IMG/VR virus record: IMGVR_UViG_3300026885_000050 | Location: 1-13,958 of that record | DNA: 13,958 nt | Direction: 5' to 3' (one strand) | Part shown: positions 2,611 through 13,857 of the stretch, piece by piece | How positions within the stretch are numbered: the stretch's first letter is position 1 | Layout: each line of letters opens with the position of its first letter | Position numbers and translations under genes: made by a program | Notes under the pieces: generated by a model | What the model was told of the DNA's origin: nothing | The model's input: only the letters and a program-made list of their open reading frames with translations | Database searches by the model: none

Positions 2611-3536
2611 TATTGAACAACCTCAAATAATGCATAAACTTTACACTTTCCTGTAGCCCATGCATAAACATTAGCTGGATTATTTACATGAATTTCCAAA
2701 CTATCATTTGGCAAAATTGGGAAATTATTGTATAAATTATTTCCAATATAGACAATATAATTACTCAAATTCTGAAGAATTATTCTTACAGTTTCAATTG
2801 GCGGGCCAGTGTATAACTGTGAAGGTGTTGTATTTACATCTAATTGAAGTCCTTCTATTGTTGGAGGCGATAAATACAAAGAAAGTTTATTTAACGTATT
2901 AACTAATCCGACTGTGGCTAAATAGACATATGTAAGCGTATAAGCTATAGAATCAGCAATAAAATAAATCGCATTTTGTAACGGAATTCCTAATCTTTTA
3001 GCTATTGAATCTATTAATTCATAAAATGAAGTATAGAAATTCTGTAAATCTTCTTTTATTATAGTTCTAGCTTGTTCAACATTTGAAATTAAATAATTTA
3101 CAACATTATAAATTGTCTCATATAAAGCGGTTGTATCTTTCTCTAAAATTGAAGTGGCAGTCGGAACAGCAACTATAATTTTTTCATAAATTTCTTCTGG
3201 TAACTTAACAATTGAATAGTATAACTGTTCATTCGAATACAGAATTGCATTTATTTGTTGTCCAGCTGTAGCTATAAATCCAGCGATATATATCGGGTCT
3301 TCTTCTGTAAGAACTGGCTGTCCAGCTACATAAATTTCATCATAAAAATTTCCAGAACTGGCAATTATAGAACCTGGAATTGTTAGATTTCCATTTTGTA
3401 GAATTGAAGTTACAGCATTACCGCCAGTTAAATAAAGTTCGGTCAAAAGTAGAACTGCAGTGTTCCACATTCCAGATGTCAGTCTCTGGAAAGGTGATGC
3501 TAATAAACTTGAGATTGAGGCATAAGTAATGCTCAT
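2610..3536 (-). CDS. Conserved rudivirus protein (SIRV2 ORF309-like), possibly virion-associated
   Basis: 308-aa ORF with its own TATA-GTCAT promoter 17 nt upstream of the ATG, translationally coupled to the methyltransferase. Size and position match recalled SIRV order. Confidence 0.7.
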   Translation of the reverse strand: MSITYASISSLLASPFQRLTSGMWNTAVLLLTELYLTGGNAVTSILQNGNLTIPGSIIASSGNFYDEIYVAGQPVLTEEDPIYIAGFIATAGQQINAILYSNEQLYYSIVKLPEEIYEKIIVAVPTATSILEKDTTALYETIYNVVNYLISNVEQARTIIKEDLQNFYTSFYELIDSIAKRLGIPLQNAIYFIADSIAYTLTYVYLATVGLVNTLNKLSLYLSPPTIEGLQLDVNTTPSQLYTGPPIETVRIILQNLSNYIVYIGNNLYNNFPILPNDSLEIHVNNPANVYAWATGKCKVYALFEVVQ

Positions 3537-8045: not shown

Positions 8046-8624
8046 TCATTCTTCTTCAACATCAACATCACTAACATCAATATCATCAATAACATTTTCA
8101 TCATTAATAATCTTGATAGCATCTTCTATTTTATCTTTAAATTCTGCTTTAATTTCCTCAGAGCTTAACAGACCATAAACTTCATTACTTAAAGCTTCAG
8201 AAATTGTATCTACATTTATTTCTTCTAAATTTACAAAAATACATAAATCCAAATATCCATAAGCCTCTAGTATATTATCTATGTATCTTTTGACAATTCT
8301 CTTTTTTTCTTCTTCTGGAAAATCAAATTCAACAATAACTTCTTCAAATGCATAATTTAATTCATCAATTTGTTTGTTTAATTGTATCATAATTTTAGAA
8401 TTTTTCATGAATGCATTGAATAATTCTTGTAATTCCTTTTCATCAAAATATTGTAAATTCCAATTATCTTTTTCTACAATTTCTGAAATCATTTGGATTA
8501 TTGCATCTGCTACAATATCTTTAAAATTTGTATAACAATTTTGAATAATATTATCAACATTTAACCATATAACAATATTTTTCTTAAATCTTTCTTTATC
8601 TAATCCTCTTAAAACTATACTCAT
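8046..8624 (-). CDS. Highly acidic hypothetical protein, 192 aa
   Basis: Intact ORF, D/E-rich with tail DENVIDDIDVSDVDVEEE. Upstream TTTTTAAATATGTCAT promoter (8650-8665, minus) and SD-like GTGA. Confidence 0.8.
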   Translation of the reverse strand: MSIVLRGLDKERFKKNIVIWLNVDNIIQNCYTNFKDIVADAIIQMISEIVEKDNWNLQYFDEKELQELFNAFMKNSKIMIQLNKQIDELNYAFEEVIVEFDFPEEEKKRIVKRYIDNILEAYGYLDLCIFVNLEEINVDTISEALSNEVYGLLSSEEIKAEFKDKIEDAIKIINDENVIDDIDVSDVDVEEE

Positions 8625-8649
8625 ATCACATCATTCTTCTTTTTCGAAT

Positions 8650-8666
8650 ATGACATATTTAAAAAC
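8650..8666 (-). promoter_or_regulatory. TATA-GTCAT promoter for 8624-8046
   Basis: Minus strand TTTTTAAATATGTCAT, 25 nt before the ATG. Confidence 0.6.
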
Positions 8667-9656: not shown

Positions 9657-9675
9657 AAAGTTTTATATTTGTCAT
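9657..9675 (+). promoter_or_regulatory. TATA-GTCAT promoter for the wHTH gene
   Basis: AAAGTTTTATATTTGTCAT (purine-rich BRE, TATA, GTCAT). Confidence 0.65.
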
Positions 9676-9702
9676 ATTTCTTTTTTATATATTTGATATA
9701 AA

Positions 9703-10211: not shown

Positions 10212-10535
10212 TTAATCTTCATAATATTCTATAATAAGTCTGTTTATCGGTATATCGTTTTCAGTTACTATTTTCATTGTTTCTCTTGGCTTTAAAACTA
10301 GCAATTGGAATAATTCGTCTAGATTTTTAACTCCTAATTCTTCATATGGTATAAAATAAATATCGAAAATTCCACGGCTATCTTCATGTTGGACTAGGCA
10401 ATATTTGTCTTGATAATCTGAGATATAACATGTATATTCATTAGTAAAGATAATTTCAAAATTATTCTTATGTTTAAAAATTATAATATCTCCAACTGTA
10501 TCGGCTAATTCAAAACATAATTTATAATTTCTCAT
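10212..10535 (-). CDS. Hypothetical acidic protein, 107 aa (anti-defence candidate)
   Basis: SD GGTGAG shortly before the ATG. Last gene of the operon with the AcrIIIB1-like genes. Confidence 0.8.
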   Translation of the reverse strand: MRNYKLCFELADTVGDIIIFKHKNNFEIIFTNEYTCYISDYQDKYCLVQHEDSRGIFDIYFIPYEELGVKNLDELFQLLVLKPRETMKIVTENDIPINRLIIEYYED

Positions 10536-10548
10536 TATCTCACCACAT

Positions 10549-10776
10549 TTATCTTTTACAAATTACATATTTCCAACCGTTATCATTTACTAATACAACT
10601 TCTCTTTTATTTTCTGGACATTGATCAATTGTTGATAAGGGTAATGCATAAGCTTTATAGTGATCACAACTATTTGTAAGCGGGAAATAATTAGACGTTT
10701 TTATTAATAATTCCCTATGACATATCGGACATTTATAAACAATTAAATCTCCAAATTTCTCAACTTTTAATTCCAT
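10549..10776 (-). CDS. Small putative Zn-binding protein (CPIC...SCDH), paralog 1, 75 aa
   Basis: SD GAGGTGA (contains the track's GTG) precedes ATG 10776 (MELKVEK). Motif shared with 13076-13330 and 13526-13801. Confidence 0.8.
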   Translation of the reverse strand: MELKVEKFGDLIVYKCPICHRELLIKTSNYFPLTNSCDHYKAYALPLSTIDQCPENKREVVLVNDNGWKYVICKR

Positions 10777-10788
10777 AACTTTCACCTC

Positions 10789-11481
10789 TTATTCTTGTTT
10801 TTTAGATTTTAAATATATAATTAAGTAATGTTTTTCCGGATTTAACATCACTTTGTTTTCTTGATTATCTGGAGTTTTTATTGTTAATTCTTTAACTCCT
10901 TTAGCATACATAAAATATGCTATATTCGGCTTTGAGATTAGACCGGTTATCTCAACATTTTTCGAAAACTTTAGCTCATAATTCTCAATTGTTAGTTCAT
11001 TTTTAATATCAAAATTAAGTTCATTGGTATATTTTAGCATTGGAGTTTCGTAAATTTCTAATTGCCTATTCTTATAAATCAACGGGAATTGGTATAATTG
11101 TCCTTTCACATATTTATCTAAAATCATTATTTGTTTTTCATCATAATTAATGAGCAATCTTTTTTCTTCCAAATCATAAAATTCTATAATTCTCATAATG
11201 AGGTCTGTCAAATCATTTAGATTTTCAGCAAATCTTCCACGTGAAGATATAAAGATTTTTGGCGGTGCAGTTATATAATATATGCCCCTAGCTTCTGCTA
11301 AAGCATAATTAATTAATTCATAACAACCGCTGAACTTTCTTCCAGATTTAGAAATATATTTTGCACAATCAATATAATCGCCTTGAACTGTACTAATCTT
11401 GGTAACTTGACCTTCTATATGTTTAACCATAAAGACTTTTGGAAGGTAATTTAGATATTTTAGAATTTTTACCTCAGACAT
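10789..11481 (-). CDS. acrIIIB1: Anti-CRISPR AcrIIIB1-like protein (SIRV2 gp48 family), paralog B
   Basis: EVKILKYLNYLPKVFM, DCAKYISKSGRKFSGC, RGIYY, LLINYD..I.ILDKYVKGQLYQFPLI match motifs I recall from SIRV2 gp48 (EVK.IK.LN.LP.VF; NCA.Y.SRSG....GC; GIYFTP; YD.Y.KG..Y.FPL). Full-length similarity to 11767-12489. Confidence 0.8.
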   Translation of the reverse strand: MSEVKILKYLNYLPKVFMVKHIEGQVTKISTVQGDYIDCAKYISKSGRKFSGCYELINYALAEARGIYYITAPPKIFISSRGRFAENLNDLTDLIMRIIEFYDLEEKRLLINYDEKQIMILDKYVKGQLYQFPLIYKNRQLEIYETPMLKYTNELNFDIKNELTIENYELKFSKNVEITGLISKPNIAYFMYAKGVKELTIKTPDNQENKVMLNPEKHYLIIYLKSKKQE

Positions 11482-11487
11482 CTTAAC

Positions 11488-11757
11488 TCACTCTTCTTCT
11501 ATTTCTTCTTCTACATCTTTTATATATTCTAATGCCATCTTTATTGTATTCTCGAGATTGTCAATTATTTCATGGAAAAAGTAATCTAAAATATCGTTTT
11601 TAACAAACGTAATAAGTAGATATTGTTTTCCTTCTTTGTCAACTGTAATTTGGGCAGTCCAAATTTCCACATCTTTTGGAAAATCTGGAAATTCTTTAAC
11701 CATCTTCATGACTTCTTCCCTTACATCTTTTATTGGGTTATATTTATATTCAACCAT
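11488..11757 (-). CDS. Small acidic hypothetical protein, 89 aa (anti-defence candidate)
   Basis: SD GGTGAG overlaps the upstream TAG. ATG 11757 (MVEYKY) preferred to GTG 11766. Tail DVEEEIEEE. Sandwiched between the two AcrIIIB1-like genes. Confidence 0.8.
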   Translation of the reverse strand: MVEYKYNPIKDVREEVMKMVKEFPDFPKDVEIWTAQITVDKEGKQYLLITFVKNDILDYFFHEIIDNLENTIKMALEYIKDVEEEIEEE

Positions 11758-11766
11758 ATTTCTCAC

Positions 11767-12489
11767 CTAAGTCCTAGGTTTTGGGTGAGTTATTAAATAG
11801 TATTTGTTAACTTTTAGCATAACTGTATCTGTAGAACTTGTTGGCGATTTTAAAGTCAATGTCACTTCATTTTCCGGATGTATTAAAAATGCCACGCCGG
11901 GGTCTGAATATAAATCTCTAGTTAATGTAGGACTGGAAAACTGTATTTCGTGATGATAAATTGTTAGGCTATTGGAATGATTAAAACTAAGATTTAAATC
12001 ATTATTTATTGGCGGAACTTCATAAATTTCTAGATAATCTTGGTTGTATATTAGGTTAAATTGGTACAATTGACCTTTAATATAGTAATCGTAAATTGTT
12101 ATCGAATAATTATCATAGGAAATCAATAATTCTTTAAATCTGAGGTTTAGAAGTTCTATCTCTTTTAGTATAATGTTTTTCATATCCTCAAGACTTCTAG
12201 TAATTTTACTTCTTTTGTTAACTGAAAATATCGGTGGTGCTGGAGTATAATATATGCCTCTGGTCTGTAGAAGCTCATCTTCAAGATATTTAAAACAACC
12301 GCTGAAAGTTAATCTAGATCTTGAAATATAATTTGTGCAATTTTCGAAATATTTTGCTAATATTGAGATCTTGGTAACCTCACCATCAAGATGTTTTATC
12401 ATGAAGACTGATGGCAGATATTCTATTTGCTTTAGTATTTTTACTTCATATTTTTTAGTTTGACTTTCTTGACTTGAATTTTGAGACAT
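11767..12489 (-). CDS. acrIIIB1: Anti-CRISPR AcrIIIB1-like protein (SIRV2 gp48 family), paralog A
   Basis: EVKILKQIEYLPSVFM, NCTNYISRSRLTFSGC, GIYYTP, LLISYDNYSITIYDYYIKGQLYQF, PGVAFLIHPE and C-terminal THPKPR (recalled gp48 SHPRPR). SD GGGTGA upstream. Confidence 0.85.
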   Translation of the reverse strand: MSQNSSQESQTKKYEVKILKQIEYLPSVFMIKHLDGEVTKISILAKYFENCTNYISRSRLTFSGCFKYLEDELLQTRGIYYTPAPPIFSVNKRSKITRSLEDMKNIILKEIELLNLRFKELLISYDNYSITIYDYYIKGQLYQFNLIYNQDYLEIYEVPPINNDLNLSFNHSNSLTIYHHEIQFSSPTLTRDLYSDPGVAFLIHPENEVTLTLKSPTSSTDTVMLKVNKYYLITHPKPRT

Positions 12490-12522
12490 TTAATCTATCA
12501 CCCGCAAAATAACATATGCATT

Positions 12523-12545
12523 ATGACAAATTTAAAACTTCTTTT
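12523..12545 (-). promoter_or_regulatory. BRE-TATA-GTCAT promoter of the acr operon
   Basis: Minus strand AAAAGAAGTTTTAAATTTGTCAT, 33 nt before ATG 12489, with an SD in the leader. Confidence 0.7.
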
Positions 12546-12582
12546 ATCTTTCAAAAATTTTAACATTAATCATCATGACTTT

Positions 12583-12648
12583 GAATTTCTATGAATTTCG
12601 AATTTTTATCTACAAACTGAGAAAAATCGCTGATAGCTTTAGCTAAAT
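12583..12648. repeat. Partial copy of the intergenic cassette repeat
   Basis: GAATTTTTATCTACAAACTGAGAAAAAT...GCTAAAT versus GAATTTTTATCACAAAACTGAGAAAAAT (about 12998-13025) and GGCTAAAT (about 13493). Confidence 0.75.
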
Positions 12649-12707
12649 ATGGCCCGAAAAAAAGCAAACTAATGACTTTGAACTTGAAAACTAAAAAAAC
12701 GTTTAAC

Positions 12708-12875
12708 TTACCAACAGTCAGATAAATATTTCCTAACTGTCCTCTCTGTAACGCCTAAAAATGAGGCGATCTCTGCAATGCTATAACCTTGTCTTGCAAG
12801 CTCATGGACTATTGAAATCATATCGTCTCTCGAATTTATGTAATACTTTGTCTGACCGATTTGCACAACTTTCAT
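12708..12875 (-). CDS. HTH DNA-binding protein, SIRV1 ORF56a / SIRV2 Gp1 family, 55 aa
   Basis: MKVVQIGQTKYYINSRDDMISIVHELARQGYSIAEIASFLGVTERTVRKYLSDCW has a clear HTH and matches the recalled family pattern (YY..S.DD..S..HELA..GY....IA..LGV.ER.VR.YL..C). ATG 12875 preferred to TTG 12890. Confidence 0.85.
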   Translation of the reverse strand: MKVVQIGQTKYYINSRDDMISIVHELARQGYSIAEIASFLGVTERTVRKYLSDCW

Positions 12876-12910
12876 TTTCCTTTTCCCCAATTTACATTTT
12901 CATTTGCCCC

Positions 12911-13068
12911 TTTATAAAATTTTCTTTATGCTTTTGCCTTTACAAACTACGATTTCTTTATCGCTAAACACGTTATCTCTCAATTTCTTAACTTTCTGAA
13001 TTTTTATCACAAAACTGAGAAAAATTAAGCATAATTTAGGCAAATTAGAATTAGAAAAAATAAAAAAA
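12911..13068 (-). repeat. Intergenic cassette repeat copy A (terminator + conserved core + BRE/TATA promoter)
   Basis: Aligns end to end with 13365-13523 with a single 1-nt gap. Shared blocks TTTATAAA.TTTTCTTT, CGAT.TCTTTA.CGCTAAACA, TGAATTT.TATCACAAAACTGA.AAAAATT, GAATTAGAAAAAATAAAAAAA. Confidence 0.9.
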
Positions 13069-13075
13069 TATTAGC

Positions 13076-13330
13076 TTAAGATGGGCTTTGTTTGGGATAT
13101 AAAATATAAATGCTTGTTCCAGACCAAATCCTCAGTACAGCGTTTTTATTGAGTCTTTGTGCGTTCAATTCATAATAAAGATTACCAAACTCTCTCCACT
13201 CAAAATGCTGACATGAAGATTTTATTACGCCACCATCATATTCATTTGTCCATGCTAGCTCTGTGTTATCAATTGGACAATAATAGACTATAATTTGACC
13301 GTGATATTTCTCAATTGGACGTATTACCAT
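13076..13330 (-). CDS. Small putative Zn-binding protein (CPID...SCQH), paralog 2, 84 aa
   Basis: Own promoter (13365-13381), GGGGG SD-like tract and terminator. Motif shared with the two paralogs. Confidence 0.8.
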   Translation of the reverse strand: MVIRPIEKYHGQIIVYYCPIDNTELAWTNEYDGGVIKSSCQHFEWREFGNLYYELNAQRLNKNAVLRIWSGTSIYILYPKQSPS

Positions 13331-13364
13331 TTATTTCCCCCAATATTAATTATGTAACTTCTCA

Positions 13365-13523
13365 TTTATAAATTTTTCTTTGCATTTTTACATTTGCATT
13401 TTTCGATCTCTTTAACGCTAAACATGTAAACTCTGAATTTCTCAATTCTTTGAATTTCTATCACAAAACTGAAAAAAATTTCCCAGAATTATGGCTAAAT
13501 TGGAATTAGAAAAAATAAAAAAA
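13365..13523 (-). repeat. Intergenic cassette repeat copy B
   Basis: See copy A. The minus strand starts with terminator TTTTTTTATTTTTTCTAATT right after the 13526 stop and ends in AAAGAAAAATTTATAAA. Confidence 0.9.
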
Positions 13524-13525
13524 AC

Positions 13526-13801
13526 TTAACTTTTACGAGGAACGATAAAACTTACATACTTTTTGAACTCAAACTTCATTACCGCTTTCGCTTCATATTT
13601 TGGAATATTCTGAGAACTTTTCGGGTCACGATATACATCAATGATTTCAAAATGACTGCATGAAGATAACGGTTCAACAACATCTTTATGGAATTTTCTA
13701 AGAAAATATTCTGGATCGTTCGTAGCTAATATGTCTCCACAAATTGGACACTTGATATAGATTTTCTTGTCCACATGTTCAACTTTTAGTTGATACTTCA
13801 T
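13526..13801 (-). CDS. Small putative Zn-binding protein (CPIC...SCSH), paralog 3, 91 aa
   Basis: Intact ORF with own promoter and terminator. Motif shared with the two paralogs. Confidence 0.8.
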   Translation of the reverse strand: MKYQLKVEHVDKKIYIKCPICGDILATNDPEYFLRKFHKDVVEPLSSCSHFEIIDVYRDPKSSQNIPKYEAKAVMKFEFKKYVSFIVPRKS

Positions 13802-13808
13802 TTTAGAT

Positions 13809-13857
13809 CAACATAATTTATGTTGTTTCTTATATTTAAATTTTTCTTTATGCTTTT
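13809..13857 (-). promoter_or_regulatory. Cassette-class promoter (partial repeat copy) with palindromic operator-like site
   Basis: Minus strand AAAAGCATAAAGAAAAATTTAAATA; the block TTTTCTTTATGCTTTT is identical to copy A. Palindrome CAACATAA-T-TTATGTTG at 13809-13825. Confidence 0.7.

What the first reader, a model, noticed from the sequence alone, without database searches (positions are those of the whole stretch)
10549..13801. Three-member family of small CxxC/D...SCxH proteins: candidate anti-defence family
Seen: three ORFs (10549-10776, 13076-13330, 13526-13801) share (V/I)E-x4-5-I-x2-3-CPI(C/D)-x3-L, a variable-length loop, SC-x-H(F/Y) and a C-terminal (A/V)V(L/M)...Y...(K/R) hairpin, with little similarity elsewhere. 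One lies inside the acr operon and two in repeat-flanked cassettes. One has Asp in place of the second Cys. Inference: a Zn-stabilised scaffold with a hypervariable loop between the ligand pairs, diversifying against different host targets. I do not recognise a characterised member.
Basis: partly seen in the sequence, partly recalled or inferred. Interest (0 to 1): 0.7.

Follow-up and report, generated by a model that had tools for sequence, protein, structure and literature searches.

The report
Small metal-site anti-defence candidate family
Three small genes at the end of this Sulfolobus rod-shaped-virus genome are real paralogues with a likely zinc site and an unmatched predicted fold; they sit among anti-CRISPR genes, parts of the family are already listed as predicted (untested) anti-defence genes, and their target is unknown.

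Summary
The three minus-strand ORFs (75, 84 and 91 aa) are homologous: pairwise BLASTP gives E 2e-5 to 8e-4, and HMMs built without window sequences cross-detect them.

The family has about 40 clusters (50% identity) in 1.84 billion proteins. C, C/D, C, H and F/Y are invariant. I found members only in rudivirus-like contigs and the element YNP1.

The window is the terminal 14 kb of a Usarudivirus-like genome. The 91- and 84-aa genes are single-gene cassettes that share a BRE/TATA promoter with aca8. The 75-aa gene lies inside an operon with two AcrIIIB1 paralogues and an ADG.22-family gene.

Bhoobalan-Chitty et al. 2024 (PMC11065993) already list relatives as predicted anti-defence genes under three separate names: ADG.20, ADG.12 and mADG.08. 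None has been tested.

New here:
- these clusters and the operonic subfamily are joined into one superfamily;
- the conserved metal-site signature is defined;
- the confident AlphaFold models have no PDB neighbour.

The "hypervariable loop" claim is only partly right. The insert differs between subfamilies but is conserved within them.

Anti-defence function is inferred from context only. Zinc binding is inferred from conservation only.

The parts
13526..13801 (-). 91-aa family member (long-insert subfamily; orthologue of mADG.08 / L7G90_02800)
   Evidence: ORF. It is 77% identical to P0005, which is L7G90_02800. AF2 model pLDDT 84.6.
13076..13330 (-). 84-aa family member with Asp at the second ligand position (ADG.20-like subfamily)
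   Evidence: ORF. tblastn hits to the SIRV V3 and V65 ORFs that PMC11065993 lists as ADG.20. AF2 model pLDDT 90.4.
10549..10776 (-). 75-aa family member, an internal gene of the AcrIIIB1 operon; five Cys
   Evidence: ORF. SD GAGGTGA 5 nt upstream of the ATG. Orthologues P0008 and P0011-P0020. Same position in L004, L013 and L024.
13833..13849 (-). Class-1 BRE/TATA core (AAAGAAAAATTTAAATA), 32 nt upstream of the 91-aa ATG
   Evidence: Pattern search: 3 hits in the window, and 0 of 200 shuffles reach 3. Alignment A4.
13365..13381 (-). Class-1 BRE/TATA core, 35 nt upstream of the 84-aa ATG
12911..12927 (-). Class-1 BRE/TATA core, 36 nt upstream of the aca8 ATG
12708..12875 (-). aca8 (55-aa HTH; putative repressor of the early anti-defence promoters)
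   Evidence: 65% identical to SIRV9 2935..3102, which PMC11065993 lists as Aca8. Pfam HTH_23 and Sigma70_r4_2.
13497..13532 (-). T-rich 3' repeat (likely terminator) after the 91-aa gene
   Evidence: Repeat D4, 89% identical to 13042-13077. Alignment A7.
13042..13077 (-). T-rich 3' repeat (likely terminator) after the 84-aa gene
   Evidence: Repeat D4.
12522..12536 (-). Class-2 promoter core (TTTAAATTTGTCATA) upstream of the AcrIIIB1 operon that contains the 75-aa gene
   Evidence: Pattern search: 3 hits, 0 of 200 shuffles reach 3. Inverted repeat I6 with the copy at 9658-9676.
11767..12489 (-). AcrIIIB1 homologue 1 (240 aa), first gene of the operon
   Evidence: BLASTP E 2e-36 to SIRV2 gp48 and 4e-109 to SIRV9 gp52, which PMC11065993 lists as AcrIIIB1.
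11488..11766 (-). 92-aa protein with an acidic tail, second gene of the operon; function unknown
   Evidence: Conserved in L004, L013 and L024.
10789..11481 (-). AcrIIIB1 homologue 2 (230 aa), immediately upstream of the 75-aa member
   Evidence: BLASTP E 9e-20 to SIRV2 gp48 and 5e-64 to SIRV9 gp52.
10212..10535 (-). 107-aa ADG.22-family protein, immediately downstream of the 75-aa member
   Evidence: E 1e-27 to the SIRV V3 ORF compl(34359..34643), listed as ADG.22. That cluster also holds a 535-aa ADG.22-AcrIIIB1 fusion.

Best explanation
The three ORFs are diverged paralogues of one small-protein superfamily (75-105 aa) found in mobile elements of Sulfolobales, mainly Usarudivirus-like rod-shaped viruses. 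Shown: homology, purifying selection, the conserved signature, the gene contexts and the shared promoters. Each protein is predicted to fold into one compact alpha/beta domain. An N-terminal beta-hairpin ends in a CPxC/D knuckle, a subfamily-specific insert follows, then a second C-x-H(F/Y) knuckle, a helix and a C-terminal beta-hairpin. Inferred: the four invariant side chains (Cys, Cys or Asp, Cys, His) hold one structural metal ion, most likely Zn, which clamps the two knuckles together. Inferred from context and from published work on the same promoter class: the genes are switched on immediately after infection. Two are transcribed from the strong BRE/TATA promoter they share with aca8. 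The third is co-transcribed with two AcrIIIB1 paralogues and an ADG.22-family gene. Inferred: the proteins act stoichiometrically, binding and blocking host defence components. The subfamily-specific insert and the variable surface charge would set which target each paralogue binds, so a genome with three copies covers up to three targets.
For: Homology. Invariant positions in 42 representatives: C 42/42; C 32 or D 10; C 42/42; H 42/42; F/Y 42/42. The odd core Cys count (3, or 2 plus Asp) fits a metal site better than disulfides. C and D interchange within one subfamily at 73% identity. Two independent AF2 models (pLDDT 84.6 and 90.4) share the same order of secondary-structure elements. BFVD models of SIRV9 gp56 and SIRV6 gp22 superpose at Foldseek probability 1.00 and TM 0.54-0.63. 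Purifying selection: dN/dS 0.16-0.59. Context: aca8 is adjacent. The class-1 promoter occurs exactly three times, upstream of aca8 and the two cassette genes. The operon holds two AcrIIIB1 homologues and ADG.22. The same architectures recur in L004, L006, L013, L016, L018 and L024 with 1-3 members per locus. The YNP1 member is the second gene behind ADG.74. Relatives are listed as predicted ADGs in PMC11065993, and that paper reports that acr and aca8 genes carrying this type of promoter are expressed immediately after infection in SIRV2. No member was found in 185,579 species-representative genomes by pattern scans. Family pI ranges from 4.2 to 9.7, which argues against a common nucleic-acid-binding surface.
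Against: No member has been tested for any activity. The anti-defence assignment rests only on guilt by association and promoter class, and early genes can serve other take-over functions. SIRV6 gp22 is a family member in the central, conserved genome region, and I did not find it in the ADG tables. Metal binding is untested, and I could not read model coordinates to check the ligand geometry. Pfam zinc-ribbon models score far below their cut-offs. The genome scans used short peptide patterns and could miss distant cellular homologues.
Confidence: 0.5

Rival explanations
1. The proteins are small zinc-ribbon-type nucleic-acid binders that regulate transcription. They could regulate viral early genes alongside Aca8, or host genes in the way SIRV2 AcrIA3 binds the host cas promoter, rather than blocking defence proteins directly.
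For: CPxC knuckles are typical of zinc ribbons, and weak sub-threshold hits go to Zn_ribbon_Top1, TFIIB ribbon, Lar, YacG and gpCom. The 91-aa subfamily is basic, pI 8.4-9.5. An Acr that works by promoter binding has a precedent in the same virus group (abstract of 10.1101/2024.04.02.587611).
Against: Family pI spans 4.2-9.7, with 22 of 42 acidic, so there is no conserved basic surface. All Pfam hits are far below their cut-offs. No PDB DNA- or RNA-binding fold matches either model.
Confidence: 0.15
2. They are early host-takeover or virus-virus competition factors unrelated to immunity. They might inhibit host transcription, replication or cell division, or mediate superinfection exclusion. 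In that case they merely share the early promoters with acr genes.
For: The promoter-based criterion only shows co-regulation with acr and aca8 genes. SIRV6 gp22 lies in the core region. The N-terminus of the conserved SIRV1 ORF156 / SIRV2 gp29 carries a weak copy of the motif at the equivalent locus.
Against: Members are patchy, multi-copy and vary between close viruses, and they are embedded between AcrIIIB1 and ADG.22 genes. This is the pattern of accessory counter-defence genes rather than core take-over functions.
Confidence: 0.2
3. The resemblance is a chance recurrence of a short CxxC...CxH pattern in unrelated small AT-rich ORFs, or the ORFs are not genes.
For: Pairwise identities are low (23-40%) and confined mainly to the N-terminal half.
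Against: Cross-subfamily HMM detection. 44 clusters found in 1.84 billion proteins with full-length alignments. The C-terminal hairpin and F/Y after His are conserved. dN/dS is below 1. Promoters and an SD are conserved. The AF2 topologies agree.
Confidence: 0.02

Closest known systems
Predicted anti-defence gene clusters ADG.20, ADG.12 and mADG.08 of Bhoobalan-Chitty et al. 2024 (PMC11065993, Supplementary Data 1)
   Same: These are the same protein family. ADG.20 (SIRV V3, V65, L7G90_02795) matches the 84-aa ORF. mADG.08 (L7G90_02800 = P0005) is the orthologue of the 91-aa ORF. ADG.12 (SIRV8 gp60, SIRV9 gp56) is detected by the family profile at E 5e-11. They share the same kind of context: aca8, a shared early promoter and the genome terminus.
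   Different: The paper lists them as three unrelated clusters with no functional prediction and no test, and 'zinc' and 'cysteine' do not occur in its main text. The operonic 75-aa subfamily has no relative in the deposited phage/virus genome records I searched, and the paper's pipeline took only single genes. The unification and the C-(C/D)-C-H signature come from this analysis.
AcrID1 family (SIRV3 gp02; multi-copy small Acr family in rudivirus termini)
   Same: Same genomic behaviour: small proteins, several diverged paralogues per genome near the termini, shared early promoter, next to aca8.
   Different: No sequence or structural relation. The profile search of PDB sequences and two Foldseek PDB searches returned no AcrID1 entry.
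Zinc-ribbon small proteins (e.g. Lar, YacG, TFIIB ribbon, phage Mu Com)
   Same: A CPxC knuckle after a beta-hairpin and a second ligand pair after a loop. Some, such as YacG, are small stoichiometric protein inhibitors (recalled from the literature, not checked here).
   Different: All Pfam and PHROG scores are far below their cut-offs (13-14 bits against cut-offs of 25-32). The second pair is C-x-H rather than C-x2-C. The domain has an extra helix and a C-terminal hairpin. No PDB fold match.
SWIM zinc finger (CxCxnCxH)
   Same: It shares the unusual C-x-H second ligand pair, and a SWIM-domain protein is also among the predicted ADGs (ADG.54).
   Different: The first pair here is C-x2-C/D, not C-x-C. 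No Pfam SWIM hit at E up to 1. This resemblance is recalled from memory and was not tested further.

Membership tests
ADG.20 / ADG.12 / mADG.08 (predicted archaeal-virus anti-defence genes, PMC11065993) | Sequence homology to listed cluster members | tested here: met
   tblastn E 2e-4 and 9e-4 to the V65 and V3 ORFs. Profile E 1e-27, 1.5e-16 and 4.7e-11 to the V65, V3 and SIRV9 gp56 ORFs. P0005 = L7G90_02800 is 77% identical to the 91-aa ORF.
ADG.20 / ADG.12 / mADG.08 (predicted archaeal-virus anti-defence genes, PMC11065993) | Strong BRE/TATA promoter within a regulatory sequence shared by several genes of the same genome | tested here: met
   The class-1 core occurs 3 times, upstream of aca8 and the 84- and 91-aa genes, and 0 of 200 shuffles reach 3. 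About 100 nt of upstream sequence align. The 75-aa gene is operonic, behind the class-2 promoter shared with two other genes.
ADG.20 / ADG.12 / mADG.08 (predicted archaeal-virus anti-defence genes, PMC11065993) | Immediate-early expression after infection | not testable with these tools
   There are no transcript data for this uncultured virus. It is inferred from SIRV2 data cited.
Anti-CRISPR / anti-defence protein (functional class) | Inhibits a host defence system in vivo or in vitro | not testable with these tools
   Only guilt by association is available: aca8, AcrIIIB1 x2 and ADG.22 as neighbours.
Zinc ribbon / structural Zn site | Four conserved metal ligands in two knuckles | tested here: inconclusive
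   C, C/D, C and H are invariant in 42 representatives. The knuckles sit at beta-hairpin ends in both AF2 models. The ligand geometry could not be measured because no coordinates were available.
Zinc ribbon / structural Zn site | Match to a curated zinc-ribbon family model above its cut-off | tested here: not met
   The best Pfam hits score 13-14 bits against cut-offs of 25-32. There is no significant PDB sequence or fold hit.
Zinc ribbon / structural Zn site | Stoichiometric metal in purified protein | not testable with these tools
   This needs ICP-MS or a PAR assay.
AcrID1 family | Sequence or fold similarity to AcrID1 | tested here: not met
   No AcrID1 chain appears among the PDB sequence hits or the listed matches (top 50) of either Foldseek PDB search.

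The most novel reading that the evidence does not exclude
The family is a new-fold, metal-clamped inhibitor scaffold. Rod-shaped archaeal viruses have duplicated and re-tooled it, through a subfamily-specific insert, into up to three paralogues per genome. Each paralogue would neutralise a different host immune component, such as subtype I-A, III-B or a toxin-antitoxin/pAgo system. The operonic 75-aa member would work as a partner of AcrIIIB1 and ADG.22. I recall no archaeal Acr with a Zn site, so this may be the first; I did not check the literature for this.
Probability: 0.3. Interest if true: 0.7.

Novelty: new member of a known kind. Interest (0 to 1): 0.45.

Why it matters
Few archaeal anti-defence proteins have been tested: the 2024 paper counted four archaeal Acrs before adding its own I-A and toxin-antitoxin inhibitors (abstract). 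Most early genes of Sulfolobales viruses have no known function. This analysis merges three separately catalogued predicted clusters and one uncatalogued operonic subfamily into a single family. The family has a defined four-residue signature, confident structure models and a clear set of point mutants to make. That turns a list of orphan ORFs into one tractable target for the existing S. islandicus / SIRV2 Acr assays. If a member proves active, it would add a new fold and possibly a metal-dependent mechanism to archaeal counter-defence. It would also give a sequence signature for finding anti-defence islands in hot-spring viromes. If inactive, it would show the limits of promoter-based ADG prediction.

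Tried and rejected
- **Pfam and PHROGs on the three proteins:** only sub-threshold zinc-ribbon-like noise. The PHROGs that hold SIRV9 gp56, SIRV6 gp22 and SIRV1 ORF156 are separate families of unknown function.
- **tblastn against 50,697 phage/virus records:** the 75- and 91-aa proteins have no hit. The 84-aa protein hits only V3, V65 and YNP1.
- **PDB searches:** the profile search of PDB sequences gave nothing below E 0.09. Foldseek against PDB with both models gave nothing below E 0.1, with poor TM and rmsd.
- **Pattern scans of 185,579 species-representative genomes with two subfamily alignments:** no relative found. IMG/VR scans returned only the window's own contig, one sister contig and YNP1. 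The full family alignment was too diverse for that tool.
- **Context look-ups for distant members P0034, P0038, P0040 and P0042:** contigs too short to be informative.
- **Is the 107-aa neighbour AcrIA3 (SIRV2 gp47)?** Only a 23-residue local match, so rejected; it is ADG.22 instead.
- **Is the 192-aa gene ADG.06?** No similarity.
- **The sigma-70 promoter/terminator scan** is not applicable to an archaeal virus and was ignored.
- **The top BFVD hit Q5W370 (SIRV1, 88 aa)** could not be mapped to an annotated ORF of AJ748296.
- **Ligand distances** could not be measured because model coordinates are not exposed.


Full report
**What the window is.** The window is 27% G+C. Its best DNA matches are Yellowstone Sulfolobus islandicus rod-shaped viruses (SIRV8, 89.5% over 610 nt). 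It is identical to IMG/VR contig IMGVR_UViG_3300026885_000050. Gene content and order match the right-terminal 14 kb of a Usarudivirus: methyltransferase, glycosyltransferase, permease, tRNA-ribosyltransferase, then small terminal genes.

**Checking the observation.**
- The three ORFs are present on the minus strand at the stated coordinates.
- For the first ORF, the ATG at 10776 is the likely start. It sits 5 nt after a GAGGTGA Shine-Dalgarno motif that contains the alternative GTG, and most orthologues begin there.
- Pairwise BLASTP gives E 2e-5, 3e-5 and 8e-4.
- A profile of the three found 26 proteins in a 5.8-billion-protein collection, falling into three subfamilies.
- An exhaustive HMMER search of 1.84 billion representatives found 44 clusters at E up to 0.001. 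About 40 of these are full-length small proteins of 75-144 aa, most of them 75-105 aa; four are long proteins with 4-9 short matches, probably spurious.
- HMMs built from each subfamily without any window sequence retrieve the other two window ORFs as their best cross-hits.
- A simple regex for the motif hits only family members, plus SIRV1 ORF156, among all six-frame ORFs of the window and 18 loci.
- Close orthologues have dN/dS of 0.16-0.59, so these are real genes under purifying selection.

**Anatomy of the protein.**
- In 42 representatives the first Cys, the third Cys, the His two residues later and the following F/Y are invariant. The second ligand position is Cys in 32 and Asp in 10.
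- Cys and Asp alternate within the 84-aa subfamily, between proteins 73% identical.
- The core therefore has three Cys plus His, or two Cys plus Asp plus His. The odd Cys count and the invariant His fit a single tetrahedral metal site better than disulfides. This is inference.
- About half of the family carries an extra pair of Cys that comes and goes as a pair (total Cys 5 against 3, or 4 against 2). This looks like an accessory disulfide or a second site.
- AlphaFold2 models of the 91-aa and 84-aa proteins are confident (pLDDT 84.6 and 90.4). Both have the same order of elements: beta-hairpin, CPxC/D knuckle, strand, insert, CxH, strand, helix, C-terminal beta-hairpin.
- Foldseek against BFVD returns independently predicted models of SIRV9 gp56 and SIRV6 gp22 at probability 1.00 and TM 0.54-0.63. 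The sequence profile also detects both (E about 5e-11 and 3e-11).
- Neither model has a meaningful PDB neighbour (best E 0.13-0.24, with poor TM and rmsd). The profile finds no PDB sequence relative.
- The insert between the ligand pairs is 17, 18 or 26 residues in the three window proteins, and 17-26 across the family.
- The insert is not hypervariable. Within subfamilies its identity (0.78, 0.42, 0.84) equals or exceeds the rest of the protein. Between subfamilies it is 0.07.
- Net charge varies widely, with pI from 4.2 to 9.7.

**Genomic context in the window.**
- The 55-aa HTH gene at 12708-12875 is aca8. It is 65% identical to the SIRV9 ORF that Bhoobalan-Chitty et al. 2024 list as Aca8.
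- The 91-aa gene, the 84-aa gene and aca8 form three tandem single-gene cassettes.
- Each cassette is preceded, 32-36 nt before the ATG, by the same purine-rich BRE plus TATA core. That core occurs exactly three times in the window, and 0 of 200 shuffles reach three. About 100 nt of alignable upstream sequence goes with it.
- The two family cassettes also share a T-rich 3' end.
- The 75-aa gene is the fourth gene of a tightly packed operon: AcrIIIB1 homologue (240 aa), a 92-aa protein, a second AcrIIIB1 homologue (230 aa), the 75-aa member, then a 107-aa protein.
- The two large proteins match SIRV2 gp48 (AcrIIIB1/AcrIA4) at E 2e-36 and 9e-20, and SIRV9 gp52, listed as AcrIIIB1.
- The 107-aa protein belongs to ADG.22. 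That cluster also contains a 535-aa fusion with AcrIIIB1.
- The operon has a second promoter type, TTTAAATTTGTCATA. This also precedes the ADG.02-like 81-aa gene and a 192-aa gene.

**Context elsewhere.**
- The same operon with a 75-aa member recurs in L004 (a 38-kb contig), L013 and L024.
- The 91 / 81-84 / aca8 array recurs in L006-L008. L014 and L015 carry 91- and 82-aa members without aca8 in view. L016 and L018 each carry three members around aca8.
- In SIRV V3 the member sits next to the ADG.22 gene.
- In the circular element YNP1 the member (gp37) is the second gene behind ADG.74, inside a run of predicted ADGs.
- SIRV6 gp22 is the exception. It lies in the central region after the glycosyltransferase gene.
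- Pattern scans of 185,579 species-representative genomes found no cellular copy. These scans have limited sensitivity.

**What is already known.**
- PMC11065993 predicted anti-defence genes in archaeal viruses from shared early promoters.
- Its Supplementary Data 1 lists the V3 and V65 ORFs and L7G90_02795 as ADG.20, L7G90_02800 as mADG.08, and SIRV8 gp60 / SIRV9 gp56 as ADG.12. No functional prediction is shown for these entries in the retrieved rows.
- 'Zinc' and 'cysteine' do not occur in the paper's main text, and these clusters are not marked as tested Acrs.
- Two further literature searches found no characterised member.
- So the anti-defence idea is not new for parts of this family. 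New here are the unification into one superfamily, the operonic 75-aa subfamily, the metal-site signature and the unmatched predicted fold.

**Most likely mechanism.**
- Shown: homology, conservation pattern, predicted topology, co-location and co-regulation signals with aca8, AcrIIIB1 and ADG.22.
- Inferred: early expression; one structural Zn (or similar metal) held by C, C/D, C and H; stoichiometric binding of host defence components; target choice set by the subfamily-specific insert and the variable surface.
- I put about 0.95 on the family being real, about 0.7 on a structural metal site, and about 0.5 on anti-defence activity.
- Rivals are a nucleic-acid-binding regulator (0.15) and a non-immune early take-over factor (0.2). 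Chance resemblance is excluded.

**Verdict.** This is a real and neatly defined family in the right place to be counter-defence. Parts of it are already catalogued as predicted ADGs, and it is functionally untested. It is a good experimental target, of moderate rather than high surprise.

Noticed in passing
window 8649-8663 (-), 9662-9676 (+), 12522-12536 (-): A second shared promoter core (TTTAWATTTGTCATA) precedes the 192-aa gene, the 81-aa ADG.02-like wHTH gene and the AcrIIIB1 operon. So the window has two distinct early-promoter classes, and only class 1 includes aca8.
   Followed up: partly
window 10789-12489 (-): AcrIIIB1 is duplicated (240 and 230 aa, both matching SIRV2 gp48), with a conserved 92-aa acidic-tailed gene between the copies. 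The same arrangement occurs in L004, L013 and L024. SIRV1 variant XX also has two copies.
   Followed up: partly
window 10212-10535 (-); L002 279-575: The ADG.22-family gene is adjacent to a family member both here and in SIRV V3, though in a different order. ADG.22 is fused to AcrIIIB1 in a 535-aa MAG protein. This hints at a functional module of AcrIIIB1, ADG.22 and the small metal-site protein.
   Followed up: partly
L009 12635-13105 (SIRV1 XX ORF156); SIRV2 gp29 begins at L026 4863 (the fetched stretch is cut there): The N-terminus of the conserved 156-aa rudiviral protein carries a weak copy of the motif (CPID...CDH; hmmsearch E 9.5e-5 in a small database, hhalign probability 41%). It occupies the same locus, after the glycosyltransferase gene, as the family member SIRV6 gp22. 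This may be an ancestral or domain-fused relative.
   Followed up: partly
alignment A5 (family-wide); window 10549-10776: About half of the family, including the 75-aa protein, has an extra pair of cysteines that is gained or lost as a pair. This suggests an accessory disulfide or a second metal site.
   Followed up: no
L006 (JAKMAA010000023.1, 9176 nt): This contig is binned as 'Candidatus Nanopusillus sp.'. It carries ThyX, a PDDEXK nuclease, rudivirus-type RHH genes, aca8 and two family members in rudivirus order. It is probably a mis-binned rudivirus genome end.
   Followed up: partly
window 12708-12890 (-): PHROG 7067 and the RefSeq annotations of SIRV2, SIRV6 and SIRV9 label the Aca8 HTH protein 'terminase small subunit'. 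This is almost certainly a propagated misannotation, since rudiviruses have no terminase-type packaging (this last point is from general knowledge, not checked here).
   Followed up: no
BFVD entry Q5W370 (SIRV1, 88 aa): This is the best structural match of the 91-aa model (E 2e-4, TM 0.62). I could not map it to any annotated or six-frame ORF of SIRV1 variant XX that carries the motif, so its identity is unresolved.
   Followed up: partly
window 8046-8624 (-): A 192-aa very acidic protein with a D/E-rich C-terminus is driven by the class-2 promoter. It is not related to ADG.06 (SIRV9 gp51), which occupies the similar position.
   Followed up: partly
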